A DNA stretch of 64,000 nt from Magallana gigas (lineage: Eukaryota), in assembly GCF_963853765.1 (NCBI RefSeq), contig NC_088854.1, positions 3,348,001 to 3,412,000 of the forward strand, in the 5' to 3' direction. Below the pieces are notes generated by a model that ran no database searches, was not told the DNA's origin, and was given only the letters and a program-made list of their open reading frames with translations. A program made the translations under genes and the position numbers. This document shows positions 1 through 21,985 of this stretch, piece by piece (within the stretch, counting starts at the first letter, position 1; each line of letters opens with the position of its first letter).

Positions 1-1665
1 CCCGGTCTTAGAATTGCTGTCTTCGCTCATGGTGATTATTGTGATAAAAACTCGTCATATGTCACCAAACACATTGACTTTTCAACCGATTTGAAAGAAC
101 TGTGTAACTGGGTGAAAAATGTTGAATCCACGGGTGGCGGCGATAGCGATGAATGTTATGAATTGGTGTTGCATGGGGTTCAAAGTCTATCGTGGACGCC
201 GAGATCACAGAGAGCTCTGGTGATGATTGGAGATGCAAATCCGCATGGTGTAAATTACCCAGACAATAAATTGAGATTAGATTGGGAAGTGGAATTAGAC
301 AAATTGGCAGCAATGGTGAGTACTTTTATGCAATAATTAGAGTATACACGCTTTTGATGGTAAATTAATTTCGATCACTTATAATTCAAAGCAACATTAA
401 AAGCAAAGCAGTTTAAATTTTGGCTCATAAACACTTTTCATCTCATTCAGAGTGTCCGCGTGTACGGTGTACAGTGCGGAGGTTCGGGCGATGAGAGAAC
501 CAAAAACTTCTACCAAACACTGGCCAACAAGACGGCGGGCAGACGAGTGGAGTTGGAGCAGTTTTCCAACTTATTTGATTTTATCATGGCTATTTGCTAT
601 AGAGAGCAAGGAGCAGAGTTTCTAGACCTCTATGAACAGGAAGTCCGTGCCAGAGATGCTAGAATGGGTCTCCATAAGGACGTACACGCTCTGTTCGGGG
701 CTCTAAGAGAGGGAGAAGAAGAACCTTCAACTTCCTCGTCAACCGCAGAGAAGCCAAAGTCCAGAACACTTCCATTCAAGCCAGCTCTGAAAAAGAAACC
801 TTCGCTCACAAAGGCTCCTTCCATTACCAAACTGAAGAAAAACAGTTCCCTCATTCATAAAGTCAAGAAAACCATCGCCAAAAAGAAACCCAGCTCTGCA
901 GTCGATAGAAAGAAGGCGAAACTCTTGGCCATTTCTTGTCAAAAGGTACGTAGAAGTCTTTTTTCTTCTTCTTCTTCTTCTATTTCAGAATACACCCCAT
1001 TAGATTGAAAATGTTTCTCGACCCTTAAAAGAACACTTTGGCTAACCAGAGGTTTTCTATTTATCGATCCAGCCTGCTCTCTTTTTCGGGATTCCTTGGC
1101 TGGCAAAAATATTTGTTGTATGACCACGCAGCTCTTTACCATTTGTGGTAAATTGTATTTCATAATATTTCAGATGAACGCTCTTAGAAAACTGAAGAGA
1201 GAAAACGTTCCGGACACGAACTTTTCTTTAAACAAAATACAGTGGTCCCCATGGGAACTAGTTATCTCTCCCACCAAACCAGAAAACGACTCTTTGTGGT
1301 CTGAAAGATACAGAGGAAGAAAGGGTTTCCGCAAAACCAGCGTCTGCGGAGGAAAGACTTTTCCTGCAGCTGTGTACGAGTTCTCTGTGAGGAAACTTTC
1401 CGATCCTAAACGCTACGTGACATACTGTAAATTGTCGTCAGGATTCACCAAGACAAGGTGTTGGGAATCGAGACTTTTATCTCATTCTGACGTTCGATCC
1501 CAAGTCAACAAAATTGTTGCTTTAGGGTATTCCGTCTATGTACGACGATGTTTGTTGAATGATTCTAACAAAGACACTGTCAGGAAATCATTACTTCGAT
1601 ATGACTATGCTTGGAAGCGAGTTACAAATGTTAGGGATTCGCAAAGAGATATATCAGTAGCATAA
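1..1665 (+). CDS. VWA + Lys-rich linker + ET/HRT-type GIY-YIG-like protein, copy 1 (5'-truncated by window edge)
   Basis: Exons <1-315, 451-945, 1174-1665. GT-AG introns, both phase 0. Same protein as copy 2 over the visible part. Confidence 0.88.
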
Positions 1666-2010
1666 TTTCTGTCATGTTATTTATTCTATGTCGTTTCTTT
1701 AGTACTTGTGTTGCGTTTTTATATCAGAATATTGATTCTGAAGTTGTTGTTGTTTTTCAAATAAAACAAATATGAATGCACCTCTTACTTATGTCACTTT
1801 ACAAATTTCACGACATGCCACTGGTATATTTTAAGCTTCTTAAAGTAAAATAGTTCATGAAATATATCAAGTAAGGAATTGAATTGAAAATTGAATAGCA
1901 TTGCAATTGTGAAAATCAGAAGTGAAGTGCAAACCTTACGGCATTGACAAAAGGGTGGCATCGCAAGGGAATCTTCAAGATTCAAAGGGGAACTAATATA
2001 ACACGAAATG

Positions 2011-2029
2011 CCGGTCAACTGTTGACCGG
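2011..2029. other. Perfect 9-bp inverted repeat in the array spacer (also 6027, 10042, 14057)
   Basis: CCGGTCAAC-T-GTTGACCGG, a GC-rich palindrome in AT-rich DNA. Confidence 0.85.
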
Positions 2030-3826
2030 TAGAATTCTGACATTGACAGCCACGGCGTGCTATTAGTAGGGATTGTAAACATTTTGCAGTAATAAGACTG
2101 GGTAAGCTTGGCAAAGCTAAAAAAAAATGAAAATTTGGCGAAATATTAAAGGATCAATATCTCACAAAAATCAAAGTTTTGCAAATTGTTCACATCTTGT
2201 CAGTAATTTTCCACAAAGATTGGTTTTAGATTCTTTAAAGAGAAAAACACAGATGTGTTTCTGCTGAATGTAAGTATGCAGAAATGATTCTAGTCACAGT
2301 ATTTAAAGAAAACTGTACTCGTTATAGTAACTTGCTTAAATATCTGTCCCGTGTTACCTTAAAGTGTTGTTTTGAAACACACACGTAAATTTTGAATTGC
2401 GTCGAGGAAATATTAATTTCATTATTATTAGGCAAAATTCACTTGAACTACCAATCAATTGAAACTGCGTGACTATACTGAGATTACAGTTCTTTGAAAT
2501 GCAAACAAGGATCGCTCCATGTTTTTTTTTAATTCAAACTTTCATGTCCAAATTATTCACATTTTCTCATATACTTAGTTTACAGTGCATACACATCACA
2601 TATTCACTTCATTTAAGATATAAGTATGAACACAGTCACATACCGAAGATAAAAATGCACATGTACAGACAAGTGTATACAGCGACAAACAGACATATAT
2701 GCACAAACAATCTCGAATACTTTATTTATCAACCATGGAAGTTTGCGTATTTTTAGTTAAGAGGTGGGTGGGGGAGAGGGGGACACTATCTATCAAAAGT
2801 CATACATATGCAAAAGGATACATAATAGTATACTCATATTTTCTTTTGCTATAATTTGATTACAATATCCTTGCAGCTATTATAAACAGTTTATAACAAA
2901 TCACAAATAGTTTGCCAATACTTTTCATACTCAGCAAATTTACAATTCCTAAGTACAGTAGTTTCTCAAGATGTATTCTATCAGTGACAGTTCGTTTTAA
3001 CATGAGCGTCGAGAGGTTTGGGACATTCTTAAACTTACTGGCAAAGATAAATTGTTTTACTGTAAGAATCGCTCCATGTTAATGTTCATGTTAATGGCAT
3101 GTTGAAAATAACTTGGTTCAAATCCTTTATTTTTCGATTGGTGACTCAAAATGAACTTAAAGTGCTTGTCATATGGCATATGTATTAAACGTATGTACGA
3201 TGCTCTCTATTCCGCTCTTTCTGTATAAGTAAAGAAAAACGTGGCACCAACCTTGTTCGCAACACAAACCATTATCTATAGCGTACTTGCATCTCTCCTG
3301 TATCTCGAAGGTTTGGTCGACTAACTTGAAATTTAAATAGTTACATTTTAGGTTTGCATTTTAACACCAAACGAAGTGTTCGACAAAAACACTACTTCTC
3401 AGTACCAAAACGTTATTCTGACAGCACTTATCGGTACAAAAAACCCCATTTAGACAAAATTACGCATAATACCAAAATATTATGAATTCACAAAAGGCTT
3501 AAAAAGTCAAATAAAATGGGCATTTTTCTTACAAGAACTGATTAATCTTAACAGGCCAATAAATGTTGGCGAACTATTTTTATTAGTTAATCAAGAATTC
3601 TTGCTATGTTTGCTGTGCTTTTGACTACATCACTGTAAAAAAAACTTAAAATAAGTTAACTGCACGTTAATTTTCCAAAATGTATTGAAAGGCTTTAAAA
3701 TGTGCATAGCAAAGATCGTCAGCAAAAATCTATGTTAAATGTATCGCCAGTCTATCTTATCCCAAAATCGCCAGTCTTCCCCATGCACGAGCTCGAGACA
3801 GGAATCGCGAGTCTTCACCCCGAATG

Positions 3827-3834
3827 TATATAAA
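3827..3834 (+). promoter_or_regulatory. TATA box of array gene copy 2
   Basis: TATATAAA 55 bp upstream of the ATG, with an Inr-like TCATAT (A at 3857) 30 bp downstream of the TATA start. Confidence 0.7.
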
Positions 3835-3881
3835 CTCGTGCGGATACAGAACATTCATATCCACAGAAATACCCTGATCAA

Positions 3882-5681
3882 ATGAACATGGCTGTTCCAC
3901 CAGGAGGACCAATGGAGATCTGCTTCTCTTTTGATACTACTGGGTCGATGTCCAGTTCTATAAACGCTGTAAAAGAAAATGTGCAAGAATTGATTCTACG
4001 ACTACAGACGGACATACCCGGTCTTAGAATTGCTGTCTTCGCTCATGGTGATTATTGTGATAAAAACTCGTCATATGTCACCAAACACATTGACTTTTCA
4101 ACCGATTTGAAAGAACTGTGTAACTGGGTGAAAAATGTTGAATCCACGGGTGGCGGCGATAGCGATGAATGTTATGAATTGGTGTTGCATGGGGTTCAAA
4201 GTCTATCGTGGACGCCGAGATCACAGAGAGCTCTGGTGATGATTGGAGATGCAAATCCGCATGGTGTAAATTACCCAGACAATAAATTGAGATTAGATTG
4301 GGAAGTGGAATTAGACAAATTGGCAGCAATGGTGAGTACTTTTATGCAATAATTAGAGTATACACGCTTTTGATGGTAAATTAATTTCGATCACTTATAA
4401 TTCAAAGCAACATTAAAAGCAAAGCAGTTTAAATTTTGGCTCATAAACACTTTTCATCTCATTCAGAGTGTCCGCGTGTACGGTGTACAGTGCGGAGGTT
4501 CGGGCGATGAGAGAACCAAAAACTTCTACCAAACACTGGCCAACAAGACGGCGGGCAGACGAGTGGAGTTGGAGCAGTTTTCCAACTTATTTGATTTTAT
4601 CATGGCTATTTGCTATAGAGAGCAAGGAGCAGAGTTTCTAGACCTCTATGAACAGGAAGTCCGTGCCAGAGATGCTAGAATGGGTCTCCATAAGGACGTA
4701 CACGCTCTGTTCGGGGCTCTAAGAGAGGGAGAAGAAGAACCTTCAACTTCCTCGTCAACCGCAGAGAAGCCAAAGTCCAGAACACTTCCATTCAAGCCAG
4801 CTCTGAAAAAGAAACCTTCGCTCACAAAGGCTCCTTCCATTACCAAACTGAAGAAAAACAGTTCCCTCATTCATAAAGTCAAGAAAACCATCGCCAAAAA
4901 GAAACCCAGCTCTGCAGTCGATAGAAAGAAGGCGAAACTCTTGGCCATTTCTTGTCAAAAGGTACGTAGAAGTCTTTTTTCTTCTTCTTCTTCTTCTATT
5001 TCAGAATACACCCCATTAGATTGAAAATGTTTCTCGACCCTTAAAAGAACACTTTGGCTAACCAGAGGTTTTCTATTTATCGATCCAGCCTGCTCTCTTT
5101 TTCGGGATTCCTTGGCTGGCAAAAATATTTGTTGTATGACCACGCAGCTCTTTACCATTTGTGGTAAATTGTATTTCATAATATTTCAGATGAACGCTCT
5201 TAGAAAACTGAAGAGAGAAAACGTTCCGGACACGAACTTTTCTTTAAACAAAATACAGTGGTCCCCATGGGAACTAGTTATCTCTCCCACCAAACCAGAA
5301 AACGACTCTTTGTGGTCTGAAAGATACAGAGGAAGAAAGGGTTTCCGCAAAACCAGCGTCTGCGGAGGAAAGACTTTTCCTGCAGCTGTGTACGAGTTCT
5401 CTGTGAGGAAACTTTCCGATCCTAAACGCTACGTGACATACTGTAAATTGTCGTCAGGATTCACCAAGACAAGGTGTTGGGAATCGAGACTTTTATCTCA
5501 TTCTGACGTTCGATCCCAAGTCAACAAAATTGTTGCTTTAGGGTATTCCGTCTATGTACGACGATGTTTGTTGAATGATTCTAACAAAGACACTGTCAGG
5601 AAATCATTACTTCGATATGACTATGCTTGGAAGCGAGTTACAAATGTTAGGGATTCGCAAAGAGATATATCAGTAGCATAA
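3882..5681 (+). CDS. VWA + Lys-rich linker + ET/HRT-type GIY-YIG-like protein, copy 2 (478 aa)
   Basis: Exons 3882-4331, 4467-4961, 5190-5681. Donors GTGAGT (4332) and GTACGT (4962); acceptors ttcag (4466) and tttcag (5189). Splicing joins LDKLAAM|SVRVYGVQ and AISCQK|MNALRK in frame. MIDAS-like DTTGS...TGGGD...IGDA motif in exon 1. C-terminal AAVYEF...SRLLSH...YDYAW. Confidence 0.9.
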
Positions 5682-5775
5682 TTTCTGTCATGTTATTTAT
5701 TCTATGTCGTTTCTTTAGTACTTGTGTTGCGTTTTTATATCAGAATATTGATTCTGAAGTTGTTGTTGTTTTTCA

Positions 5776-5781
5776 AATAAA
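5776..5781 (+). terminator. Polyadenylation signal of array gene (equivalents at 1760, 9791, 13806)
   Basis: AATAAA about 95 bp after the stop codon, present in all four copies. Confidence 0.65.
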
Positions 5782-7841
5782 ACAAATATGAATGCACCTC
5801 TTACTTATGTCACTTTACAAATTTCACGACATGCCACTGGTATATTTTAAGCTTCTTAAAGTAAAATAGTTCATGAAATATATCAAGTAAGGAATTGAAT
5901 TGAAAATTGAATAGCATTGCAATTGTGAAAATCAGAAGTGAAGTGCAAACCTTACGGCATTGACAAAAGGGTGGCATCGCAAGGGAATCTTCAAGATTCA
6001 AAGGGGAACTAATATAACACGAAATGCCGGTCAACTGTTGACCGGTAGAATTCTGACATTGACAGCCACGGCGTGCTATTAGTAGGGATTGTAAACATTT
6101 TGCAGTAATAAGACTGGGTAAGCTTGGCAAAGCTAAAAAAAATGAAAATTTGGCGAAATATTAAAGGATCAATATCTCACAAAAATCAAAGTTTTGCAAA
6201 TTGTTCACATCTTGTCAGTAATTTTCCACAAAGATTGGTTTTAGATTCTTTAAAGAGAAAAACACAGATGTGTTTCTGCTGAATGTAAGTATGCAGAAAT
6301 GATTCTAGTCACAGTATTTAAAGAAAACTGTACTCGTTATAGTAACTTGCTTAAATATCTGTCCCGTGTTACCTTAAAGTGTTGTTTTGAAACACACACG
6401 TAAATTTTGAATTGCGTCGAGGAAATATTAATTTCATTATTATTAGGCAAAATTCACTTGAACTACCAATCAATTGAAACTGCGTGACTATACTGAGATT
6501 ACAGTTCTTTGAAATGCAAACAAGGATCGCTCCATGTTTTTTTTTAATTCAAACTTTCATGTCCAAATTATTCACATTTTCTCATATACTTAGTTTACAG
6601 TGCATACACATCACATATTCACTTCATTTAAGATATAAGTATGAACACAGTCACATACCGAAGATAAAAATGCACATGTACAGACAAGTGTATACAGCGA
6701 CAAACAGACATATATGCACAAACAATCTCGAATACTTTATTTATCAACCATGGAAGTTTGCGTATTTTTAGTTAAGAGGTGGGTGGGGGAGAGGGGGACA
6801 CTATCTATCAAAAGTCATACATATGCAAAAGGATACATAATAGTATACTCATATTTTCTTTTGCTATAATTTGATTACAATATCCTTGCAGCTATTATAA
6901 ACAGTTTATAACAAATCACAAATAGTTTGCCAATACTTTTCATACTCAGCAAATTTACAATTCCTAAGTACAGTAGTTTCTCAAGATGTATTCTATCAGT
7001 GACAGTTCGTTTTAACATGAGCGTCGAGAGGTTTGGGACATTCTTAAACTTACTGGCAAAAATAAATTGTTTTACTGTAAGAATCGCTCCATGTTAATGT
7101 TCATGTTAATGGCATGTTGAAAATAACTTGGTTCAAATCCTTTATTTTTCGATTGGTGACTCAAAATGAACTTAAAGTGCTTGTCATATGGCATATGTAT
7201 TAAACGTATGTACGATGCTCTCTATTCCGCTCTTTCTGTATAAGTAAAGAAAAACGTGGCACCAACCTTGTTCGCAACACAAACCATTATCTATAGCGTA
7301 CTTGCATCTCTCCTGTATCTCGAAGGTTTGGTCGACTAACTTGAAATTTAAATAGTTACATTTTAGGTTTGCATTTTAACACCAAACGAAGTGTTCGACA
7401 AAAACACTACTTCTCAGTACCAAAACGTTATTCTGACAGCACTTATCGGTACAAAAAACCCCATTTAGACAAAATTACGCATAATACCAAAATATTATGA
7501 ATTCACAAAAGGCTTAAAAAGTCAAATAAAATGGGCATTTTTCTTACAAGAACTGATTAATCTTAACAGGCCAATAAATGTTGGCGAACTATTTTTATTA
7601 GTTAATCAAGAATTCTTGCTATGTTTGCTGTGCTTTTGACTACATCACTGTAAAAAAAACTTAAAATAAGTTAACTGCACGTTAATTTTCCAAAATGTAT
7701 TGAAAGGCTTTAAAATGTGCATAGCAAAGATCGTCAGCAAAAATCTATGTTAAATGTATCGCCAGTCTATCTTATCCCAAAATCGCCAGTCTTCCCCATG
7801 CACGAGCTCGAGACAGGAATCGCGAGTCTTCACCCCGAATG

Positions 7842-7849
7842 TATATAAA
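7842..7849 (+). promoter_or_regulatory. TATA box of array gene copy 3
   Basis: Same TATATAAA and spacing as copy 2. Confidence 0.7.
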
Positions 7850-7896
7850 CTCGTGCGGATACAGAACATTCATATCCACAGAAATACCCTGATCAA

Positions 7897-9696
7897 ATGA
7901 ACATGGCTGTTCCACCAGGAGGACCAATGGAGATCTGCTTCTCTTTTGATACTACTGGGTCGATGTCCAGTTCTATAAACGCTGTAAAAGAAAATGTGCA
8001 AGAATTGATTCTACGACTACAGACGGACATACCCGGTCTTAGAATTGCTGTCTTCGCTCATGGTGATTATTGTGATAAAAACTCGTCATATGTCACCAAA
8101 CACATTGACTTTTCAACCGATTTGAAAGAACTGTGTAACTGGGTGAAAAATGTTGAATCCACGGGTGGCGGCGATAGCGATGAATGTTATGAATTGGTGT
8201 TGCATGGGGTTCAAAGTCTATCGTGGACGCCGAGATCACAGAGAGCTCTGGTGATGATTGGAGATGCAAATCCGCATGGTGTAAATTACCCAGACAATAA
8301 ATTGAGATTAGATTGGGAAGTGGAATTAGACAAATTGGCAGCAATGGTGAGTACTTTTATGCAATAATTAGAGTATACACGCTTTTGATGGTAAATTAAT
8401 TTCGATCACTTATAATTCAAAGCAACATTAAAAGCAAAGCAGTTTAAATTTTGGCTCATAAACACTTTTCATCTCATTCAGAGTGTCCGCGTGTACGGTG
8501 TACAGTGCGGAGGTTCGGGCGATGAGAGAACCAAAAACTTCTACCAAACACTGGCCAACAAGACGGCGGGCAGACGAGTGGAGTTGGAGCAGTTTTCCAA
8601 CTTATTTGATTTTATCATGGCTATTTGCTATAGAGAGCAAGGAGCAGAGTTTCTAGACCTCTATGAACAGGAAGTCCGTGCCAGAGATGCTAGAATGGGT
8701 CTCCATAAGGACGTACACGCTCTGTTCGGGGCTCTAAGAGAGGGAGAAGAAGAACCTTCAACTTCCTCGTCAACCGCAGAGAAGCCAAAGTCCAGAACAC
8801 TTCCATTCAAGCCAGCTCTGAAAAAGAAACCTTCGCTCACAAAGGCTCCTTCCATTACCAAACTGAAGAAAAACAGTTCCCTCATTCATAAAGTCAAGAA
8901 AACCATCGCCAAAAAGAAACCCAGCTCTGCAGTCGATAGAAAGAAGGCGAAACTCTTGGCCATTTCTTGTCAAAAGGTACGTAGAAGTCTTTTTTCTTCT
9001 TCTTCTTCTTCTATTTCAGAATACACCCCATTAGATTGAAAATGTTTCTCGACCCTTAAAAGAACACTTTGGCTAACCAGAGGTTTTCTATTTATCGATC
9101 CAGCCTGCTCTCTTTTTCGGGATTCCTTGGCTGGCAAAAATATTTGTTGTATGACCACGCAGCTCTTTACCATTTGTGGTAAATTGTATTTCATAATATT
9201 TCAGATGAACGCTCTTAGAAAACTGAAGAGAGAAAACGTTCCGGACACGAACTTTTCTTTAAACAAAATACAGTGGTCCCCATGGGAACTAGTTATCTCT
9301 CCCACCAAACCAGAAAACGACTCTTTGTGGTCTGAAAGATACAGAGGAAGAAAGGGTTTCCGCAAAACCAGCGTCTGCGAAGGAAAGACTTTTCCGGCAG
9401 CTGTGTACGAGTTCTGTGTGAGGAAACTTTCCGATCCTAAACGCTACGTGACATACTGTAAATTGTCGTCAGGATTCACCAAGACAAGGTGTTGGGAATC
9501 GAGACTTTTATCTCATTCTGACGTTCGATCCCAAGTCAACAAAATTGTTGCTTTAGGGTATTCCGTCTATGTACGACGATGTTTGTTGAATGATTCTAAC
9601 AAAGACACTGTCAGGAAATCATTACTTCGATATGACTATGCTTGGAAGCGAGTTACAAATGTTAGGGATTCGCAAAGAGATATATCAGTAGCATAA
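7897..9696 (+). CDS. VWA + Lys-rich linker + ET/HRT-type GIY-YIG-like protein, copy 3 (478 aa; G374E, S386C relative to copy 2)
   Basis: Exons 7897-8346, 8482-8976, 9205-9696. Substitutions at 9380, 9396 (silent) and 9416. Confidence 0.9.
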
Positions 9697-11856
9697 TTTC
9701 TGTCATGTTATTTATTCTATGTCGTTTCTTTAGTACTTGTGTTGCGTTTTTATATCAGAATATTGATTCTGAAGTTGTTGTTGTTTTTCAAATAAAACAA
9801 ATATGAATGCACCTCTTACTTATGTCACTTTACAAATTTCACGACATGCCACTGGTATATTTTAAGCTTCTTAAAGTAAAATAGTTCATGAAATATATCA
9901 AGTAAGGAATTGAATTGAAAATTGAATAGCATTGCAATTGTGAAAATCAGAAGTGAAGTGCAAACCTTACGGCATTGACAAAAGGGTGGCATCGCAAGGG
10001 AATCTTCAAGATTCAAAGGGGAACTAATATAACACGAAATGCCGGTCAACTGTTGACCGGTAGAATTCTGACATTGACAGCCACGGCGTGCTATTAGTAG
10101 GGATTGTAAACATTTTGCAGTAATAAGACTGGGTAAGCTTGGCAAAGCTAAAAAAAATGAAAATTTGGCGAAATATTAAAGGATCAATATCTCACAAAAA
10201 TCAAAGTTTTGCAAATTGTTCACATCTTGTCAGTAATTTTCCACAAAGATTGGTTTTAGATTCTTTAAAGAGAAAAACACAGATGTGTTTCTGCTGAATG
10301 TAAGTATGCAGAAATGATTCTAGTCACAGTATTTAAAGAAAACTGTACTCGTTATAGTAACTTGCTTAAATATCTGTCCCGTGTTACCTTAAAGTGTTGT
10401 TTTGAAACACACACGTAAATTTTGAATTGCGTCGAGGAAATATTAATTTCATTATTATTAGGCAAAATTCACCTGAACTACCAATCAATTGAAACTGCGT
10501 GACTATACTGAGATTACAGTTCTTTGAAATGCAAACAAGGATCGCTCCATGTTTTTTTTTAATTCAAACTTTCATGTCCAAATTATTCACATTTTCTCAT
10601 ATACTTAGTTTACAGTGCATACACATCACATATTCACTTCATTTAAGATATAAGTATGAACACAGTCACATACCGAAGATAAAAATGCACATGTACAGAC
10701 AAGTGTATACAGCGACAAACAGACATATATGCACAAACAATCTCGAATACTTTATTTATCAACCATGGAAGTTTGCGTATTTTTAGTTAAGAGGTGGGTG
10801 GGGGAGAGGGGGACACTATCTATCAAAAGTCATACATATGCAAAAGGATACATAATAGTATACTCATATTTTCTTTTGCTATAATTTGATTACAATATCC
10901 TTGCAGCTATTATAAACAGTTTATAACAAATCACAAATAGTTTGCCAATACTTTTCATACTCAGCAAATTTACAATTCCTAAGTACAGTAGTTTCTCAAG
11001 ATGTATTCTATCAGTGACAGTTCGTTTTAACATGAGCGTCGAGAGGTTTGGGACATTCTTAAACTTACTGGCAAAAATAAATTGTTTTACTGTAAGAATC
11101 GCTCCATGTTAATGTTCATGTTAATGGCATGTTGAAAATAACTTGGTTCAAATCCTTTATTTTTCGATTGGTGACTCAAAATGAACTTAAAGTGCTTGTC
11201 ATATGGCATATGTATTAAACGTATGTACGATGCTCTCTATTCCGCTCTTTCTGTATAAGTAAAGAAAAACGTGGCACCAACCTTGTTCGCAACACAAACC
11301 ATTATCTATAGCGTACTTGCATCTCTCCTGTATCTCGAAGGTTTGGTCGACTAACTTGAAATTTAAATAGTTACATTTTAGGTTTGCATTTTAACACCAA
11401 ACGAAGTGTTCGACAAAAACACTACTTCTCAGTACCAAAACGTTATTCTGACAGCACTTATCGGTACAAAAAACCCCATTTAGACAAAATTACGCATAAT
11501 ACCAAAATATTATGAATTCACAAAAGGCTTAAAAAGTCAAATAAAATGGGCATTTTTCTTACAAGAACTGATTAATCTTAACAGGCCAATAAATGTTGGC
11601 GAACTATTTTTATTAGTTAATCAAGAATTCTTGCTATGTTTGCTGTGCTTTTGACTACATCACTGTAAAAAAAACTTAAAATAAGTTAACTGCACGTTAA
11701 TTTTCCAAAATGTATTGAAAGGCTTTAAAATGTGCATAGCAAAGATCGTCAGCAAAAATCTATGTTAAATGTATCGCCAGTCTATCTTATCCCAAAATCG
11801 CCAGTCTTCCCCATGCACGAGCTCGAGACAGGAATCGCGAGTCTTCACCCCGAATG

Positions 11857-11864
11857 TATATAAA
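11857..11864 (+). promoter_or_regulatory. TATA box of array gene copy 4
   Basis: Same TATATAAA and spacing as copy 2. Confidence 0.7.
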
Positions 11865-11911
11865 CTCGTGCGGATACAGAACATTCATATCCACAGAAAT
11901 ACCCTGATCAA

Positions 11912-13711
11912 ATGAACATGGCTGTTCCACCAGGAGGACCAATGGAGATCTGCTTCTCTTTTGATACTACTGGGTCGATGTCCAGTTCTATAAACGCTGT
12001 AAAAGAAAATGTGCAAGAATTGATTCTACGACTACAGACGGACATACCCGGTCTTAGAATTGCTGTCTTCGCTCATGGTGATTATTGTGATAAAAACTCG
12101 TCATATGTCACCAAACACATTGACTTTTCAACCGATTTGAAAGAACTGTGTAACTGGGTGAAAAATGTTGAATCCACGGGTGGCGGCGATAGCGATGAAT
12201 GTTATGAATTGGTGTTGCATGGGGTTCAAAGTCTATCGTGGACGCCGAGATCACAGAGAGCTCTGGTGATGATTGGAGATGCAAATCCGCATGGTGTAAA
12301 TTACCCAGACAATAAATTGAGATTAGATTGGGAAGTGGAATTAGACAAATTGGCAGCAATGGTGAGTACTTTTATGCAATAATTAGAGTATACACGCTTT
12401 TGATGGTAAATTAATTTCGATCACTTATAATTCAAAGCAACATTAAAAGCAAAGCAGTTTAAATTTTGGCTCATAAACACTTTTCATCTCATTCAGAGTG
12501 TCCGCGTGTACGGTGTACAGTGCGGAGGTTCGGGCGATGAGAGAACCAAAAACTTCTACCAAACACTGGCCAACAAGACGGCGGGCAGACGAGTGGAGTT
12601 GGAGCAGTTTTCCAACTTATTTGATTTTATCATGGCTATTTGCTATAGAGAGCAAGGAGCAGAGTTTCTAGACCTCTATGAACAGGAAGTCCGTGCCAGA
12701 GATGCTAGAATGGGTCTCCATAAGGACGTACACGCTCTGTTCGGGGCTCTAAGAGAGGGAGAAGAAGAACCTTCAACTTCCTCGTCAACCGCAGAGAAGC
12801 CAAAGTCCAGAACACTTCCATTCAAGCCAGCTCTGAAAAAGAAACCTTCGCTCACAAAGGCTCCTTCCATTACCAAACTGAAGAAAAACAGTTCCCTCAT
12901 TCATAAAGTCAAGAAAACCATCGCCAAAAAGAAACCCAGCTCTGCAGTCGATAGAAAGAAGGCGAAACTCTTGGCCATTTCTTGTCAAAAGGTACGTAGA
13001 AGTCTTTTTTCTTCTTCTTCTTCTTCTATTTCAGAATACACCCCATTAGATTGAAAATGTTTCTCGACCCTTAAAAGAACACTTTGGCTAACCAGAGGTT
13101 TTCTATTTATCGATCCAGCCTGCTCTCTTTTTCGGGATTCCTTGGCTGGCAAAAATATTTGTTGTATGACCACGCAGCTCTTTACCATTTGTGGTAAATT
13201 GTATTTCATAATATTTCAGATGAACGCTCTTAGAAAACTGAAGAGAGAAAACGTTCCGGACACGAACTTTTCTTTAAACAAAATACAGTGGTCCCCATGG
13301 GAACTAGTTATCTCTCCCACCAAACCAGAAAACGACTCTTTGTGGTCTGAAAGATACAGAGGAAGAAAGGGTTTCCGCAAAACCAGCGTCTGCGGAGGAA
13401 AGACTTTTCCTGCAGCTGTGTACGAGTTCTGTGTGAGGAAACTTTCCGATCCTAAACGCTACGTGACATACTGTAAATTGTCGTCAGGATTCACCAAGAC
13501 AAGGTGTTGGGAATCGAGACTTTTATCTCATTCTGACGTTCGATCCCAAGTCAACAAAATTGTTGCTTTAGGGTATTCCGTCTATGTACGACGATGTTTG
13601 TTGAATGATTCTAACAAAGACACTGTCAGGAAATCATTACTTCGATATGACTATGCTTGGAAGCGAGTTACAAATGTTAGGGATTCGCAAAGAGATATAT
13701 CAGTAGCATAA
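11912..13711 (+). CDS. VWA + Lys-rich linker + ET/HRT-type GIY-YIG-like protein, copy 4 (478 aa; S386C relative to copy 2)
   Basis: Exons 11912-12361, 12497-12991, 13220-13711. Carries the copy-3 allele at 13431 but the copy-1/2 alleles at 13395 and 13411. Confidence 0.9.
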
Positions 13712-16277
13712 TTTCTGTCATGTTATTTATTCTATGTCGTTTCTTTAGTACTTGTGTTACGTTTTTATATCAGAATATTGATTCTGAAGTTGTTGTTGTT
13801 TTTCAAATAAAACAAATATGAATGCACCTCTTACTTATGTCACTTTACAAATTTCACGACATGCCACTGGTATATTTTAAGCTTCTTAAAGTAAAATAGT
13901 TCATGAAATATATCAAGTAAGGAATTGAATTGAAAATTGAATAGCATTGCAATTGTGAAAATCAGAAGTGAAGTGCAAACCTTACGGCATTGACAAAAGG
14001 GTGGCATCGCAAGGGAATCTTCAAGATTCAAAGGGGAACTAATATAACACGAAATGCCGGTCAACTGTTGACCGGTAGAATTCTGACATTGACAGCCACG
14101 GCGTGCTATTAGTAGGGATTGTAAACATTTTGCAGTAATAAGACTGGGTAAGCTTGGCAAAGCTAAAAAAAATGAAAATTTGGCGAAATATTAAAGGATC
14201 AATATCTCACAAAAATCAAAGTTTTGCAAATTGTTCACATCTTGTCAGTAATTTTCCACAAAGATTGGTTTTAGATTCTTTAAAGAGAAAAACACAGATG
14301 TGTTTCTGCTGAATGTAAGTATGCAGAAATGATTCTAGTCACAGTATTTAAAGAAAACTGTACTCGTTATAGTAACTTGCTTAAATATCTGTCCCGTGTT
14401 ACCTTAAAGTGTTGTTTTGAAACACACACGTAAATTTTGAATTGCGTCGAGGAAATATTAATTTCATTATTATTAGGCAAAATTCACTTGAACTACCAAT
14501 CAATTGAAACTGCGTGACTATACTGAGATTACAGTTCTTTGAAATGCAAACAAGGATCGCTTCATGTTTTTTTTTAATTCAAACTTTCATGTCCAAATTA
14601 TTCACATTTTCTCATATACTTAGTTTACAGTGCATACACATCACATATTCACTTCATTTAAGATATAAGTATGAACACAGTCACATACCGAAGATAAAAA
14701 TGCACATGTACAGACAAGTGTATACAGCGACAAACAGACATATATGCACAAACAATCTCGAATACTTTATTTATCAACCATGGAAGTTTGCGTATTTTTA
14801 GTTAAGAGGTGGGTGGGGGAGAGGGGGACACTATCTATCAAAAGTCATACATATGCAAAAGGATACATAATAGTATACTCATATTTTCTTTTGCTATAAT
14901 TTGATTACAATATCCTTGCAGCTATTATAAACAGTTTATAACAAATCACAAATAGTTTGCCAATACTTTTCATACTCAGCAAATTTACAATTCTTAAGTA
15001 CAGTAGTTTCTCAATATGTATTCTATCAGTGACAGTTCGTTTTAACATGAGCGTCGAGGGGTTTGGGACATTCTTAAATTTACTGGCAAAAATAAATTGT
15101 TTTACTGTAAGAATCGCTCCATGTTAATGTTCATGTTAATGGCATGTTGAAAATAACTTGGTTCAAATCCTTTATTTTTCTATTGGTGACTCAAAATGAA
15201 CTTAAAGTGCTTGTCATATGGCATATGTATTAAACGTATGTACGATGCTCTCTATTCCGCTCTTTCTGTATAAGTAAAGAAAAACGTGGCACCAACCTTG
15301 TTCGCAACACAAACCATTATCTATAGCGTACTTGCATCTCTCCTGTATCTCGAAGGTTTGGTCGACTAACTTGAAATTTAAATAGTTACATTTTAGGTTT
15401 GCATTTTAACACCAAACGAAGTGTTCGACAAAAACACTACTTCTCAGTACAAAAACGTTATTCTGACAGCACATATCCGTACTCTAAAACCGAAAAAAAC
15501 TGTTCAAAGAGGAGTGTGCAAGTAGGGAAAGATTTACAAAACTTCCTATAATATTTTCATAGGTTTGTCTTAACTTTACTATGTATATTGTTTAAACATA
15601 TATAAAGTATTACTGTAGTTGCCGTTGTATATGTAGATGCGATCTTTTCACCCTTATAATAGCTAACAAGGCATGTAACACTGTCGCATGGACAATCCTC
15701 TTTCTGGTCAGCAAATATAAAACGAGACTATGAGTTAATCAATGTTTTATTTACAAGAAAAATATGGAAAATGTATACTTGCATCGAGCAACAATAACTG
15801 TTAAATCAAGGATATATCCTGATTTGAGTTTCTAATAATGGAGAACAATAATGATTGACAAAGTAAAAAAAATGAAAAAATGCTCAAATCTTCAATTTAT
15901 TCGCATTTTAAAAATTATTTGACCTGAGAAAAATTCTACGACCGGACAAAAATGTTTGGAGAGGGTGATATCTTTAAGAAAAAATAACTTCCAGCCGTGA
16001 AGTATGCGGGTCCATTAAACTCGAAAAATGAGCGACCTTTTCTATCTTTGTCACTCCACTATATAGAGATCTTATTTCACTCGAGATATAAACAGATAAA
16101 TTTAATAGCTATGTTTTTTCTTACTTGTTATGAATTTAGTCACATTGACTTTGTTGTTGTAACTGTTTCATTTAAAGCAATCCATGTCATTTTAACGCTG
16201 TTTTTTGCTATGTTGGAAACCTGATCAAAACTTTCTAATTTATATATAATGGCAGGTATATCTCAATTTGAGAGCTA

Positions 16278-16411
16278 NNNNNNNNNNNNNNNNNNNNNNN
16301 NNNNNNNNNNNNNNNNNNNNNNNNNNNNNNNNNNNNNNNNNNNNNNNNNNNNNNNNNNNNNNNNNNNNNNNNNNNNNNNNNNNNNNNNNNNNNNNNNNNN
16401 NNNNNNNNNNN
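16278..16411. other. Assembly gap (134 N)
   Basis: Run of N. Confidence 1.
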
Positions 16412-16757: not shown

Positions 16758-18918
16758 ATGATAGCATATTTTCTTCTTTTGACTGTGACTAGTGTACTTG
16801 GTGCTCCAACGTAAGTTTTATCATTATGATATCAAAGAGTTTAAGATAAATGAAATAAAATTGATACCCATTAAAAGAGACAAAAACCATACTTTTGAGA
16901 TTATCGATAACTACGGATGATGGGAAACAACTTTGCCCTGTTTCAGTGACCAGTCACATTCTGCTTTGGAACAATTCAAGAACATTATTCGGACACAGGT
17001 CACCACACTTTGGCACACTGTTGACAAAAATGGCGACGGTCGATTCGAGGCGAGCGACATGCACCACATCTTCGATGATTACGATGCTAACCGTAAGAAT
17101 CACTCTTGGAGTGGGAGCTTATTGCCACTCTTTATTGCCAGTCATTGCATTTATCTGTTATTCTTTTGCAAAAAAAGGATGGTATTGTGTCCCTATGTAT
17201 GTCAACTTAAAGGTTTAAAGGAGGAAAATTATCCTAAAAATAATGTTTTAACTGAAAATGGCGCGGCAACGGGACATAACTTTTGAAACTTGCCGATTTA
17301 AGTGCACATTTCACCTTGATATACTTGATATTTATTTGATACATGTACGTGATACGTGATTTATCATATTCTGATTCAATGCATATCGTCGTGAATGGAC
17401 GTCAGTAGTATGCTTTATTTATGATAGATAAGTCACTAATGGCGTTTTGTTAACCATCCGCTCGATGGTCATAAGGGTCTTCAGTTAGTCATGTAAATTA
17501 AGGTGGTATGGGACATCTGTAGATATTAATGTGAGTTAAAGTACATTAAAATTAAAATACTTTTATCGGTTTAGAATTTTCAAATTTTACAATGTTTATC
17601 AAAAAAAATATCCATTAAAAAATATTTGGAGAGTTAAAAATTGTAAAACCTACACCGGGACTCGAACTCTTGACCTACATATTCGTGGTAAACCGTCTAA
17701 CCCACTGCACTACGCTGGCATATGATAATAACGGGAAAGAAACTAGTTATATATTAATTACAATTGATTTTGTTGTTTATATCGATAAACAATTCGTCAC
17801 AACATGGAAGTGCCCAATACCACCATCAGAAAAAGTCCCTTTTGATTTTATATAATTGTCTAATCTAAGAACTACCAGGAACACTAACCACTAATTTAAG
17901 CTGCTAATCTCAAGTTGGTCTTAATTGACAGAGAAGAGTAACTTTGTTGATAGGAATATATAATAATAATAATATATATTTTTTTCTAAAAATACATTTT
18001 GTGATATAACCTGAAAAGGCATACTGCATTCATTTACAAAATTGCTTTTACGATTACTTTGCTGCTTAGATGACCATAGTGTGACTAAGCATGAATTCGT
18101 GACGAGGTTTGCCCACAATGAACCAGAGTTGAACATAATCGGTGAGGGTCTGTTCCTGGAGTTCGACATGAACCAAGATGGCGCTATCACCGTGTCCGAT
18201 TTAGACCTCTACTATCAGAAGATCGATTCAAACAGTGAGTAATGTTAACCGCCTTAAAACGGGATCAACTATTTTAAGTGTCTTTTATCAAAATAAAGGT
18301 CCCCGTATACAACCATCTTTGAGTGTGCATTTCAAAAGTTAATTGTTTTAAGAAAAATAACTATTAATACAGCAGTTTTATAAATATTCGTTGCTATTTA
18401 GTGTTATGGCAGGGCTTTATATAGACTATCTCTCTTAGAGAGATTTGTACCTTGCCGGGTGTGAAATGAACGTTAAGACGACATGTGTTTCAAAACTTTT
18501 TTAAAAGATTATACGTGCCACTCAAATGTCGGCTTACACGTGCGAAGGCATTGGTGTATATAATTGATTCATAGCAATATTATCATTTCTGTGCACACCG
18601 TTAAACAATTACTGAAACAACACACTATAGTATTTACCGCAAACATCCAAAGGATAGTCAAATGATGTAATCTTTGTATTAGATGATTTTTTAAATTATA
18701 TTTTGTAGACAATGGGCATGTGGAGAAGGAGGAATTCGTTCACTACTTTACGGAGGTACGTCTGATTGATATCTTTCGAATTGTTTTTATGACAAAAGTA
18801 TTTAACAATAAACGGTCTGTGTTGTCGTTGATTTATTGTCGTTGATTTGTTGTAGATCTTCACCATTCTGTACGTCATCCAGCTGAATCAGACGACAGTT
18901 GCACCTGGCGGCCGCTAG
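16758..18918 (+). CDS. Secreted four-EF-hand calcium-binding protein (157 aa), similar in architecture to molluscan insoluble matrix shell protein 5-like proteins
   Basis: Coding exons 16758-16810, 16947-17092, 18070-18234, 18709-18755, 18856-18918; phases 2/1/1/0 all reconcile. Signal peptide MIAYFLLLTVTSVLG. EF loops DKNGDGRFEASD, DANHDHSVTKHE, DMNQDGAITVSD, DSNNNGHVEKEE. A probable 5' UTR exon ends at the GTAAGT donor at 16500. Confidence 0.88.
17498..17828. mobile_element. MITE-like element with degenerate terminal inverted repeats and an internal tRNA-derived segment, in intron of the EF-hand gene
   Basis: Left end TTAAGGTGGTATGGGACATCT; right end AGTGCCCAATACCACC is an imperfect reverse complement. 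Minus-strand A box TAGTGCAGTGG and B box AGTTCGAGTCC at about 17653-17718. Confidence 0.65.
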
Positions 18919-20489: not shown

Positions 20490-20622
20490 NNNNNNNNNNN
20501 NNNNNNNNNNNNNNNNNNNNNNNNNNNNNNNNNNNNNNNNNNNNNNNNNNNNNNNNNNNNNNNNNNNNNNNNNNNNNNNNNNNNNNNNNNNNNNNNNNNN
20601 NNNNNNNNNNNNNNNNNNNNNN
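20490..20622. other. Assembly gap (133 N)
   Basis: Run of N. Confidence 1.
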
Positions 20623-21489: not shown

Positions 21490-21985
21490 ACTCACCAACA
21501 GCCTACACTAGATAGATATAATTTTAACACTTATAGACATCCTACATCGCCTAAATGTACTGTATATATACTTATAGACAGCCTACATTGGCTAAATGTC
21601 CCGTCAATACTTATAGACATCCTACATCGCCTAAATGTACTGTAATACTTATAGACAGCCTACATTGGCTAAATGTCCCGTCAATACTTATAGACAGCCT
21701 ACATCGGCTAAATGCCGTGTCAATACTTAAAAACACTCTACATCGGCTAAATGTCCTGTCAGTACTTATAGACAGCCTACATCGGCTTAAAGTCCTGTCA
21801 ATACTTATAGATATCCTACATCGGCTAAATGTCCTGTCTTAGCTGTCAATACTTATAGACAGCCTACATCGCCTATATGTCTTGTCAATATTTAAAGACA
21901 GCATACATCGGCTTAATGTCCTGTCAACAATCATATACAGCCTACATCGGCTAGATGTTTTATCAATACCTACCAACAAACTTAC
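21490..21985 (+). repeat. 39-bp minisatellite, type A
   Basis: Consensus approx. TCAATACTTATAGACAGCCTACATCGGCTAAATGTCCTG, roughly a dozen degenerate copies. Confidence 0.9.

What the first reader, a model, noticed from the sequence alone, without database searches (positions are those of the whole stretch)
1..15482. Gene-carrying 4-kb macrosatellite amplifying a VWA - basic linker - GIY-YIG-like fusion gene
Seen: at least 4 head-to-tail 4,015-bp units. Each complete unit holds a TATA box, three exons with canonical phase-0 splice sites, an uninterrupted 478-aa frame and AATAAA; no copy has a disabling change. Established: near-identical tandem amplification of protein genes is typical of dosage-critical or conflict-driven loci (histone clusters, D4Z4/DUX4, Stellate). 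Inference: this is a high-dosage, probably nuclear DNA/chromatin-binding protein under concerted evolution, or a selfish amplified locus. I do not recognise this domain architecture from any described gene.
Basis: partly seen in the sequence, partly recalled or inferred. Interest (0 to 1): 0.92.

Follow-up and report, generated by a model that had tools for sequence, protein, structure and literature searches.

The report
Tandem array of oyster VWA gene
An oyster chromosome carries eight near-identical head-to-tail 4-kb copies of an expressed, intact gene from a widespread but unstudied invertebrate family; the array is real and evolves in concert, but what the protein does is still only inferred.

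Summary
Window 1-15481 is 3.86 units of a 4,015-bp tandem repeat with 16 variant columns. Each unit carries a three-exon, 478-aa gene. That gene equals a public annotated protein (P0361). Three independent RNA-derived contigs confirm both splice junctions and the poly(A) site.

The public chromosome shows 7.86 homogeneous units (8 genes). Left of them lie at least 2 older intact copies and degenerate ones, about 63 kb in all. A second oyster assembly has the same array: 99.9% identity within each array, 95.8% between them. This shows concerted evolution and rules out an assembly artefact. dN/dS is about 0.2.

The protein has three parts:
- a VWA domain with an invariant metal-binding (MIDAS) site
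- a disordered basic linker
- a basic C-terminal domain homologous to Pfam PF19239 (GIY-YIG), in which the canonical Arg, Glu and Asn are not conserved

This architecture is not unique. I found 717 relatives in molluscs, a brachiopod and a nemertean, all named "uncharacterized", and often in tandem. I found no paper describing it.

I read it as a dosage-amplified ordinary gene cluster. The protein is probably a metal-dependent adaptor tethered to a nucleic-acid-binding pseudo-nuclease, but its function is untested. There are no hallmarks of a selfish element. Interest is moderate.

The parts
1..15481 (+). The in-window part (3.86 units) of a 4,015-bp head-to-tail tandem array. The window starts inside unit A, and the full homogeneous array is 7.86 units.
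   Evidence: periodicity, 16 variant columns; extension to the left in the public chromosome
1..1665 (+). Gene copy A, cut by the window start. It comprises the end of exon 1 (1-315), exon 2 (451-945) and exon 3 (1174-1665). Its exon 2-3 protein is identical to copy B.
3882..5681 (+). Gene copy B. Exons are 3882-4331, 4467-4961 and 5190-5681, giving 478 aa. It equals annotated protein P0389.
   Evidence: junctions confirmed by transcript contigs
7897..9696 (+). Gene copy C. Exons are 7897-8346, 8482-8976 and 9205-9696. It carries G374E and S386C and equals annotated protein P0361.
11912..13711 (+). Gene copy D. Exons are 11912-12361, 12497-12991 and 13220-13711. It carries S386C and equals annotated protein P0388.
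3743..3834 (+). Putative promoter block. It has three copies of ATCGC[C/G]AGTCT (at 3743, 3767, 3804) followed by TATATAAA (3827-3834). The same block lies at +4015 and +8030.
   Evidence: The motifs are exact in two diverged relatives while the spacers between them changed. Transcript contigs begin at or upstream of the TATA.
5776..5796 (+). AATAAA (5776-5781) and the poly(A) addition site at about 5796. The same signal lies at 1760, 9791 and 13806 in the other units.
5797..7742 (.). Intergenic spacer of the unit. It has no Pfam-matching ORF and no inverted repeat. It is the least conserved part between the two arrays (75-93% identity).
15481..15482 (.). Right boundary of the array. It lies in the spacer, about 415 nt short of where the next ATG would be.

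Best explanation
This is an ordinary cellular gene cluster in an oyster. The closest named relatives are Saccostrea and Ostrea. From my memory of the assembly accession it is probably Magallana gigas.

**The array.** The cluster was amplified by unequal crossing-over into 8 nearly identical 4,015-bp units. To its left lie older, more diverged copies. Unequal exchange or gene conversion keeps the units homogeneous (concerted evolution). Purifying selection keeps every copy intact, so the likely benefit is dosage.

**The gene product.** Each unit is transcribed, spliced twice and polyadenylated. The 478-aa protein has no hydrophobic leader by eye, so it is probably intracellular. No signal-peptide predictor was run. 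It has three parts:
1. An acidic N-terminal VWA domain with a strictly conserved MIDAS metal site. By analogy with other VWA domains, this should clamp an acidic residue of a partner protein.
2. A disordered Lys/Ser/Pro-rich linker of about 80 aa (pI 10.5).
3. A basic 160-aa domain (pI 10.1) descended from the GIY-YIG nuclease fold. It has lost the canonical Arg, Glu and Asn.

**Proposed mechanism.** I propose a MIDAS-dependent adaptor that brings a partner to nucleic acid through a pseudo-nuclease binding module and basic linker. It would act in DNA maintenance or nucleic-acid-directed defence.

**Shown:** the array, its copy number in the assemblies, concerted evolution, expression and splicing, domain homologies, and residue conservation.
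**Inferred:** the dosage benefit, intracellular or nuclear location, nucleic-acid binding, lack of nuclease activity, and biological role.
For: - **Array and boundaries:**
- **Copy number:** 8 genes at 4,015-bp spacing in chromosome OY970746.1. One of these is inferred from spacing across an unread 2.3-kb stretch. Two further 478-aa copies, 94-97% identical in DNA to the array units, lie in a 15.9-kb higher-order duplication. Truncated copies are also present.
- **Second assembly:** CM046782.1 has at least 5.5 units of about 3,975 bp, all 5 genes intact. Identity is 99.86-99.97% within that array and 95.7-95.9% to this one. The Ostrea-named relative has 2 tandem copies, 99.2% identical.
- **Constraint:** dN/dS is 0.21 overall (VWA 0.19, C-terminal domain 0.07-0.14, linker 0.9). 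The spacer diverges faster than the exons.
- **Expression:** spliced, polyadenylated transcript contigs come from three runs. Several further protein variants are seen only on 1.6-2.1-kb contigs.
- **VWA domain:** Pfam VWA_4 scores 38.7 bits against a cut-off of 27. MIDAS residues D18, T20, S22, T89 and D123 are invariant in 53 relatives. The AlphaFold model matches integrin beta I-like domains in Foldseek at E = 4e-10.
- **C-terminal domain:**
  - 131 clusters of relatives were found.
  - The phmmer E-value to P0147 is 4e-16, and P0147 itself matches PF19239 at 1e-45.
  - 21 of 44 relatives match PF19239 and 1 matches PF01541.
  - The model has pLDDT 93.7 with a beta-beta-alpha-beta-alpha core.
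  - BFVD matches reach E = 1.4e-5.
- **Charge:**
- **Link to DNA metabolism for the VWA module:** its cyanobacterial homologue lies directly upstream of ligA in 77 of 80 loci.
Against: - No experiment or expression profile ties the protein to any process.
- The loss of catalytic residues rests on alignment. E384, R439 and W462 are invariant and D459 nearly so, and they could form a non-canonical active site.
- Foldseek against solved structures gave no significant match for the C-terminal domain. The best TM-score is 0.36, to the GIY-YIG enzyme R.Hpy188I.
- The BFVD matches have no names in the tool output.
- The ligA link holds only in cyanobacteria. It is absent in viral contigs and in one other bacterium.
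- The transcripts found carry G104E, so expression of the window's own three copies is not shown individually.
- Copy number comes from assemblies, not from read depth.
Confidence: 0.6

Rival explanations
1. Active nuclease effector. The C-terminal domain is a working but non-canonical GIY-YIG-type nuclease, using E384, R439, D459 and Tyr383. The VWA domain senses or is recruited by a partner. The family, expanded and tandemly amplified in lophotrochozoans, acts as an innate-immune or anti-transposon effector, and the amplification in oysters is an adaptive response to pathogens.
For: - Residues E384, R439 and W462 are invariant and D459 is nearly so.
- Tyr383 is kept in 43 of 53 relatives.
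- The family is multi-copy and tandem in many species.
- Over long distances the C-terminal domain diverges much faster than the VWA domain: 38% against 70% identity in one homologue.
[quoted passage not shown] It responds strongly to injection (PMC6401078). I did not verify that this contig belongs to the family.
Against: - Canonical residues are not conserved. Arg is present in 26 of 53 relatives, the Glu position is hydrophobic, and Asn is present in 4 of 53.
- E384 and R439 are also invariant in canonical PF19239 relatives that keep Glu and Asn. They therefore look structural rather than a replacement active site.
- The short-range dN/dS of the C-terminal domain is low, 0.07-0.14, not the mark of an arms race, although counts are small.
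- There was no match in PADLOC.
Confidence: 0.22
2. Selfish or mobile amplification. The unit is, or derives from, a mobile element whose GIY-YIG-type protein promotes its own spread, as in homing endonuclease genes or Penelope-like elements. The array would then be a by-product of that activity.
For: - GIY-YIG domains are typical of homing endonucleases and Penelope-like elements (established knowledge; PMC8557442 was listed).
- A PF19239 relative (P0147) carries transposase-type HTH domains.
- The older left-hand copies are interrupted by 3.9-kb and 4.7-kb insertions.
Against: - The unit has no inverted or terminal repeats, and there are no other copies in the remaining 48 kb of the window.
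- It has no reverse transcriptase or transposase.
- The gene has spliceosomal introns.
- The array lies at about the same position in a second assembly.
- The gene occurs with a conserved structure across a phylum-level range.
- The catalytic residues are lost.
- Purifying selection acts on both folded domains.
Confidence: 0.04
3. Assembly artefact or dead satellite. The repeat is an over-expanded assembly of one gene, or a non-functional array of pseudogenes.
For: Near-identical 4-kb repeats are hard to assemble. Copy number here comes only from assemblies. One unit (record 3343604-3345896) was not read and is inferred from spacing.
Against: - Units carry distinct variants and give distinct annotated proteins.
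- An independent assembly of a related oyster also holds at least 5.5 units.
- All copies are intact, transcripts exist, and dN/dS is about 0.2.
Confidence: 0.03

Closest known systems
Tandem multigene arrays under concerted evolution (histone repeats, rDNA, 5S, U-snRNA clusters)
   Same: Units are head-to-tail, each with a complete expressed gene. Identity within an array is near 100% but clearly lower between species. The edge units are more diverged. The likely benefit is dosage.
   Different: There are only about 8-10 copies. The gene has introns and a poly(A) signal and encodes an uncharacterised protein. Its relatives in other molluscs occur as single genes or small clusters, so amplification is lineage-specific rather than a fixed family trait.
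D4Z4/DUX4-type coding macrosatellites
   Same: The unit is a few kilobases long, is repeated in tandem, and contains an ORF.
   Different: Every unit here is a complete spliced gene with its own poly(A) signal and is under purifying selection. I could not test copy-number polymorphism or epigenetic silencing. The copy number is much lower.
Pfam PF19239 'GIY_YIG_domain' proteins of invertebrates, and the GIY-YIG nuclease superfamily (UvrC, I-TevI, Slx1, R.Hpy188I)
   Same: The C-terminal domain is homologous to PF19239 members (phmmer E = 4e-16 to P0147). The predicted beta-hairpin-helix-strand-helix core fits the fold, and the first Tyr is mostly kept.
   Different: The window protein scores just under the Pfam cut-off and matches only the last third of the model. 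The canonical Arg, Glu and Asn are not conserved. About 50 extra residues at the N-terminus carry an invariant R-E and a W..W motif. The domain is fused to a VWA domain, which I found described for no GIY-YIG protein.
Intracellular MIDAS-VWA adaptor proteins (Ku70/80 N-terminal domain, Rpn10, TFIIH p44, copines), cited from established knowledge
   Same: The protein has no obvious signal peptide. Its VWA domain has a complete MIDAS site and is joined to a second functional module. The VWA presumably mediates protein-protein contact.
   Different: There is no detectable sequence relation to any of these. The closest solved folds are integrin beta I-like domains at 14-17% identity. The partner is unknown.
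Bacterial and large-virus 355-aa VWA proteins (cyanobacterial gene upstream of ligA; Mimivirus R811-type VWA by annotation transfer)
   Same: The whole 235-aa VWA module, including its helical tail, is about 50% identical. The MIDAS site is identical.
   Different: The prokaryotic and viral proteins carry a different C-terminal domain of about 120 aa (hhalign probability 1% against the mollusc domain). The GIY-YIG-like fusion is found only in the lophotrochozoan proteins.

Membership tests
VWA (von Willebrand factor A) domain with MIDAS | Significant match to a VWA profile | tested here: met
   PF25106 VWA_4 at E = 1e-9, 38.7 bits against a cut-off of 27, on exon 1 alone. Full-length relatives also match PF00092.
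VWA (von Willebrand factor A) domain with MIDAS | MIDAS residues D-x-S/T-x-S ... T ... D | tested here: met
   D18, T20, S22, T89 and D123 are invariant in 53 full-length relatives. The same residues are invariant in bacterial homologues.
VWA (von Willebrand factor A) domain with MIDAS | Alpha/beta Rossmann-like VWA fold | tested here: met
   In the AlphaFold2 model, residues 11-236 have pLDDT mostly 80-97. The top 500 Foldseek PDB hits all have E <= 0.001, and the 50 listed are all integrin beta-subunit chains (beta I-like VWA domains), best E = 4e-10.
VWA (von Willebrand factor A) domain with MIDAS | Metal-dependent ligand binding | not testable with these tools
   Needs biochemistry.
GIY-YIG nuclease superfamily | Sequence match to a GIY-YIG family profile | tested here: inconclusive
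   The window protein scores 21.3 bits on PF19239 against a cut-off of 21.4, and matches only profile positions 104-162. However, 21 of 44 relatives match PF19239 and 1 matches PF01541. The window domain also hits P0147 at 4e-16, and P0147 matches PF19239 at 1e-45.
GIY-YIG nuclease superfamily | GIY-YIG fold (three-stranded sheet with flanking helices) | tested here: inconclusive
   The model has pLDDT 93.7 with a core order of strand, strand, helix, strand, helix. No PDB hit is significant; the best TM-score is 0.36, to the GIY-YIG enzyme R.Hpy188I. BFVD hits reach E = 1.4e-5 and TM 0.59, but to proteins the tool does not name.
GIY-YIG nuclease superfamily | Catalytic set: Tyr (GIY), Tyr (YIG), Arg, metal-binding Glu, Asn | tested here: not met
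   In 53 full-length relatives: first Tyr 43/53; second Tyr 35/53 (Phe in 13); Arg 26/53; the Glu position is V/A/I/T; Asn 4/53. The window protein has Val and Lys at the Glu and Asn positions. PF19239 relatives without a VWA domain keep Glu and Asn. This mapping is alignment-based.
GIY-YIG nuclease superfamily | Nuclease activity | not testable with these tools
   Needs an enzyme assay.
Tandem gene array under concerted evolution | Head-to-tail units, each with a complete gene | tested here: met
Tandem gene array under concerted evolution | Units more alike within a genome than between related genomes | tested here: met
   99.73-99.97% identity within each array against 95.7-95.9% between the arrays of two assemblies.
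Tandem gene array under concerted evolution | Copies functional (expressed and under constraint) | tested here: met
   Spliced polyadenylated transcripts. dN/dS = 0.21, and exons are more conserved than the spacer. Copy-by-copy expression was not resolved.
Coding macrosatellite (D4Z4-like) | Large, copy-number-polymorphic array with epigenetic regulation | not tested
   Only 8 units are present in this assembly.
Mobile element / homing endonuclease gene | Terminal repeats, dispersed copies, transposition or homing machinery | tested here: not met
   There are no inverted repeats in the unit and no copies elsewhere in the window. No transposase or RT domain was found. The array lies at about the same position in a second assembly.

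The most novel reading that the evidence does not exclude
The family is a previously unrecognised lophotrochozoan class of nucleic-acid-directed defence or DNA-maintenance factor. It would have been built by fusing a VWA/MIDAS module of bacterial or viral provenance to a remodelled GIY-YIG domain that still acts on nucleic acid. That VWA module is the one genetically paired with the NAD-dependent DNA ligase gene ligA in cyanobacteria. On this reading, the concerted eight-fold amplification in cupped oysters is an adaptive dosage response, for example to viral pressure.
Probability: 0.15. Interest if true: 0.75.

Novelty: new variant of a known kind. Interest (0 to 1): 0.45.

Why it matters
- **A ready example of concerted evolution.** The locus is a documented case of concerted evolution in a protein-coding tandem array in a bivalve. 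Gene copy-number and presence/absence variation are thought to be important in bivalves. Unit-level variants and a sister-taxon comparison are already in hand.
- **A widespread unstudied family.** The 478-aa protein represents a conserved family with no described function: 717 detected relatives across at least three phyla. The family combines a strictly conserved metal-binding VWA domain with a degenerate nuclease fold. Working out its partner and substrate would annotate hundreds of 'uncharacterized' genes.
- **A lead beyond molluscs.** The VWA module is about 50% identical to proteins of cyanobacteria and large viruses. The tight cyanobacterial pairing with ligA is a separate lead on an unstudied prokaryotic protein.
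- **Limits.** None of this is an open-question breaker. The array itself is an ordinary kind of structure.

Tried and rejected
- **Sequence searches of PDB.** Searches with exon 1, exon 3, the 235-aa VWA module and the C-terminal profile gave nothing useful.
- **NCBIfam and PADLOC.** Scans gave nothing.
- **Spacer ORFs.** ORFs on both strands of the spacer, and the larger ORFs in the rest of the window, have no Pfam match.
- **RNA genes in the unit.** There is no tRNA or Rfam RNA gene in the unit, so it is not an RNA-gene repeat with a passenger ORF.
- **Exact look-up of the window's exon-1 ORF.** It is not on record. The full annotated protein was instead found through a profile search.
- **High-identity exon-1 hits on large contigs (P0012, P0028).** I suspected these were bacterial. 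Their contexts are eukaryotic, with the same gene and one extra intron, so I rejected them as evidence of recent transfer.
- **Is the cyanobacterial C-terminal domain the ancestor of the mollusc one?** It is not detectably so: hhalign probability is 1%, although the profile was shallow.
- **Viral-contig scan with the C-terminal alignment.** It could not be run because no stretch was conserved enough. Viral VWA proteins contain no such domain.
- **Longer family members (640-1150 aa).** They carry no extra Pfam domain that would hint at function.
- **Literature.**
  - No paper was found for the oyster or Lottia accessions.
  - None describes a VWA plus GIY-YIG combination.
  - None describes a VWA-ligA operon.
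  - A mussel 'GIY-YIG domain containing protein' paper and a geoduck paper concern other genes.
Full report
**1. The observation**

Comparing the window with itself at lags of 4,015 and 4,016 bases gives essentially 100% identity from base 1 to about 15,481, and background identity beyond. An alignment of the four units shows 16 variant columns in the 3,436 columns shared by all four. These include a single 1-nt indel at 2119. Most differences are private to the last unit and crowd towards its outer edge. Homology ends at 15481/15482. The Tandem Repeats Finder tool cannot see periods this long. The GC profile repeats every 4 kb.

- Exons are 3882-4331, 4467-4961 and 5190-5681.
- The flanks are GT..AG.
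- All exon lengths are multiples of three.
- The frame is 478 codons and is uninterrupted in copies B, C and D.
- The partial copy A has identical exons 2 and 3.
- TATATAAA lies 55 nt upstream of the ATG. AATAAA lies 95 nt past the stop.

**2. Independent confirmation**

A profile search returned a 478-aa protein, P0361, flagged as encoded by the window. It is residue-for-residue the copy C protein. P0389 equals copy B and P0388 equals copy D. The public annotation therefore uses the same model.

Three contigs of 1.5-1.6 kb come from three different sequencing runs (L009-L011). Each encodes the whole protein without interruption and aligns to the window at 99-100% identity. The gaps fall exactly at 4331|4467 and 4961|5190. 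One contig ends in a poly(A) run at about 5796, 15 nt after AATAAA.

Two caveats apply:
- The transcript contigs carry G104E. This residue is found in the left-hand copies but not in the window's copies.
- Two of them start at 3722 and 3827, at or upstream of the TATA motif.

**3. Full extent of the array**

The window starts at position 3,348,001 of a 61.5-Mb chromosome, OY970746.1 of GCA_963853765.1. I read flanking loci by looking up variant proteins, and I did not read the masked stretches.

The homogeneous 4,015-bp array runs from 3,331,939 to 3,363,481. That is 7.86 units with 8 genes. One unit falls in an unread 2.3-kb gap between loci and is inferred from the spacing.

To its left are:
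- two further intact 478-aa genes (P0393), whose DNA is 94-97% identical to the array units, lying in a 15.9-kb higher-order duplication interrupted by insertions of about 3.9 and 4.7 kb
- truncated or degenerate copies reaching back to about 3,300,110

The cluster is therefore about 63 kb with at least 10 intact genes. Identity decays with distance from the core. The right neighbour is an EF-hand gene.

**4. Not an artefact, and evolving in concert**

A second assembly is GCA_025612915.2, chromosome CM046782.1, 60.8 Mb. From memory this is the sister taxon M. angulata. At about the same position it holds an array of roughly 3,975-bp units. That array fills the whole 21.8-kb locus (at least 5.5 units), and all five genes are intact.

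| Comparison | Identity |
|---|---|
| Units within the second array | 99.86-99.97% |
| Units within this array | 99.73-99.90% |
| Units between the two arrays | 95.7-95.9% |

This pattern is the signature of concerted evolution.

Between the arrays the coding sequence shows 15 synonymous and 12 non-synonymous differences, giving dN/dS of 0.21. By region this is 0.19 for the VWA domain, 0.07-0.14 for the C-terminal domain and 0.9 for the linker. Exons are 96-99% identical, against 75-93% for the spacer. Counts are small, but the direction is clear.

A relative named Ostrea edulis has two tandem copies of a 5,034-bp unit at 99.2% identity. Consecutive locus numbers in Haliotis rubra and Babylonia areolata suggest tandem clusters there too.

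**5. The protein**

*N-terminal domain.* Exon 1 matches VWA_4. In 53 full-length relatives the MIDAS residues D18, T20, S22, T89 and D123 are invariant. So are many surrounding residues. In the AlphaFold2 model, residues 11-236 form a confident VWA fold, 239-317 are disordered, and 320-478 form a separate confident domain. The nearest solved folds are integrin beta I-like domains, at E = 4e-10 and 14-17% identity. The VWA part is acidic (pI 5.1). The linker has pI 10.5, with 22 Lys or Arg in 79 residues. The C-terminal domain has pI 10.1. By eye there is no N-terminal hydrophobic leader; no predictor was run.

*C-terminal domain.* An exhaustive search with exon 3 found 131 clusters of relatives. 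Proteins of about 460-500 aa among them have the same VWA-linker-domain layout. They come from Haliotis, Lottia, Lymnaea, Babylonia and oysters.

The window domain scores 21.3 bits on PF19239 'GIY_YIG_domain' against a cut-off of 21.4, over the last third of the model only. However, 21 of 44 relatives match that family and one matches PF01541. The domain also hits a clam protein, P0147, at 4e-16, and P0147 matches PF19239 at 1e-45.

The domain model has pLDDT 93.7 and a strand-strand-helix-strand-helix core preceded by three short strands. Foldseek against PDB gives no significant match. The highest TM-score (0.36) is to the GIY-YIG enzyme R.Hpy188I. Against predicted viral structures there are significant matches, at E = 1.4e-5 and TM 0.59. 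The tool gives these proteins no names. From the accession style I think they are chlorovirus proteins.

I conclude that the domain descends from the GIY-YIG fold.

*Catalytic residues.* P0147 shows the canonical pattern: Tyr, then Tyr-x-Gly-Lys-Ala-Lys...Arg, then Glu...Asn. I recognise this pattern from UvrC, from memory. Mapping it onto the family gives the following.

| Canonical residue | Conservation in 53 full-length relatives |
|---|---|
| First Tyr (GIY) | 43/53 |
| Second Tyr (YIG) | 35/53 (Phe in 13) |
| Arg | 26/53 |
| Glu | position is V/A/I/T |
| Asn | 4/53 |

The window protein has Val at the Glu position and Lys at the Asn position. What is invariant instead is E384, R439 and W462, with D459 in 47 of 53, plus an upstream R-E and W..W motif. 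E384 and R439 are equally invariant in the canonical relatives, so they are probably structural. The canonical active site is therefore not maintained. The domain is more likely a binding module than a standard nuclease. This reasoning is alignment-based and not proof.

**6. Distribution and literature**

A profile of 12 full-length proteins found 717 relatives at E <= 1e-5. The listed ones come from bivalves, gastropods, a chiton, the brachiopod Lingula and the nemertean Lineus. There are often several per genome. They are named 'uncharacterized protein' or 'VWFA domain-containing protein'. [quoted passage not shown] The window protein is 78% identical to a Saccostrea protein and 76% identical to an Ostrea protein.

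I found no paper on the accessions or on a VWA plus GIY-YIG architecture. A homologue in another mollusc has the same gene structure with one extra intron. Its VWA exon is 70% identical but its C-terminal exon only 38%.

**7. A lead from prokaryotes and viruses**

The whole 235-aa VWA module is about 50% identical to bacterial proteins. A scan of one genome per prokaryotic species found 302 with a relative. The best 80 are all filamentous cyanobacteria.

In these cyanobacteria the protein is about 354 aa and has a different C-terminal domain. It sits directly upstream of the NAD-dependent DNA ligase gene, on the same strand, in 77 of 80 loci. No other neighbour is shared by more than 32 loci. 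The same two-domain protein occurs in 152 viral contigs, many 100-500 kb long. There it is not next to a ligase, and it never carries the mollusc C-terminal domain. The two C-terminal domains are not detectably related.

This links the VWA module loosely to DNA metabolism. It also shows that the GIY-YIG-like fusion is specific to the animal proteins. I did not test the direction or date of any gene transfer.

**8. Interpretation**

The best-supported reading is an ordinary, expressed, selectively maintained gene that has been tandemly amplified and homogenised in cupped oysters, most simply for dosage.

Mechanistically I commit to this model: a MIDAS-dependent adaptor joined by a basic flexible linker to a basic GIY-YIG-derived domain. 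That domain binds nucleic acid and probably does not cut it. The protein would act in DNA maintenance or nucleic-acid-directed defence.

The main rival is an active, non-canonical nuclease effector, and it cannot be excluded. A mobile-element origin has no support: there are no inverted repeats, no dispersed copies, and no transposition genes. The array also lies at about the same position in the second assembly, and the gene has introns. An assembly artefact is excluded by section 4.

**9. Verdict**

The array is a known kind of structure. The protein is an undescribed combination of known domains in a widespread but unstudied family. Interest is moderate, not exceptional.

Noticed in passing
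window 28808-28880 (+): A mir-219 microRNA precursor, matched at 72.2 bits against a gathering score of 54.5 (E = 8.5e-15) over the full model length. It fits a bilaterian host genome.
   Followed up: no
window 3743-3834, 7758-7849, 11773-11864: Three copies of ATCGC[C/G]AGTCT lie within 75 nt upstream of TATATAAA in every unit. All three are exact in the second assembly (96% identical units) and in a 91%-identical relative (L008), although the sequences between them have changed. This looks like a conserved cis-element. Transcript contigs nevertheless start at or upstream of the TATA.
   Followed up: partly
L019-L098 (cyanobacterial genomes), e.g. L079:3355-4416 and L081:5152-7227: The bacterial homologue of the VWA module is a 354-aa protein of unknown function. 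It lies directly upstream of ligA, on the same strand, in 77 of 80 cyanobacterial loci. I found no description of this conserved gene pair in the literature.
   Followed up: partly
L100-L179 (IMG/VR viral contigs): The same 355-aa VWA protein is found in 152 viral contigs, many of them 100-500 kb and some labelled as giant-virus MAGs. Its C-terminal domain, shared with the cyanobacterial protein, is 52-65% identical to it. There is no conserved neighbour.
   Followed up: partly
public chromosome left of the window (L013-L015; record 3,300,110-3,331,938): Older copies of the unit form a 15.9-kb higher-order duplication. They are interrupted by insertions of about 3.9 and 4.7 kb, which I did not identify. 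Truncated copies there are annotated as 288- and 310-aa genes.
   Followed up: partly
window 16758-18918 (+), from L012 coordinates: An annotated 157-aa EF-hand protein gene is the first gene to the right of the array. N runs at 16278-16411 and 20490-20622 flank it and were left untouched.
   Followed up: no
window 21529-21969, 22534-22987, 28318-28606, 33347-33578, 49633-50327: Several minisatellites, with periods of 39, 39/77, about 19-66, 60 and 168 nt. There are also long (AT)n runs at 33603, 39473, 39635 and 60668. GC skew is strongly negative at 20-24 kb.
   Followed up: no
L008 (Logan SRR23617439), aligned to window 3486-4812: A genomic contig 91% identical to the unit comes from a related oyster or a divergent paralogue. 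Its first ATG is CTG, so translation would start at the second Met.
   Followed up: no
P0147 (Mercenaria mercenaria, 991 aa): This clam protein has transposase-type HTH domains followed by five to six tandem PF19239 GIY-YIG domains. At least three of them (by my alignment-based mapping) keep the canonical Glu and Asn. It is an unusual multi-nuclease-domain architecture.
   Followed up: no
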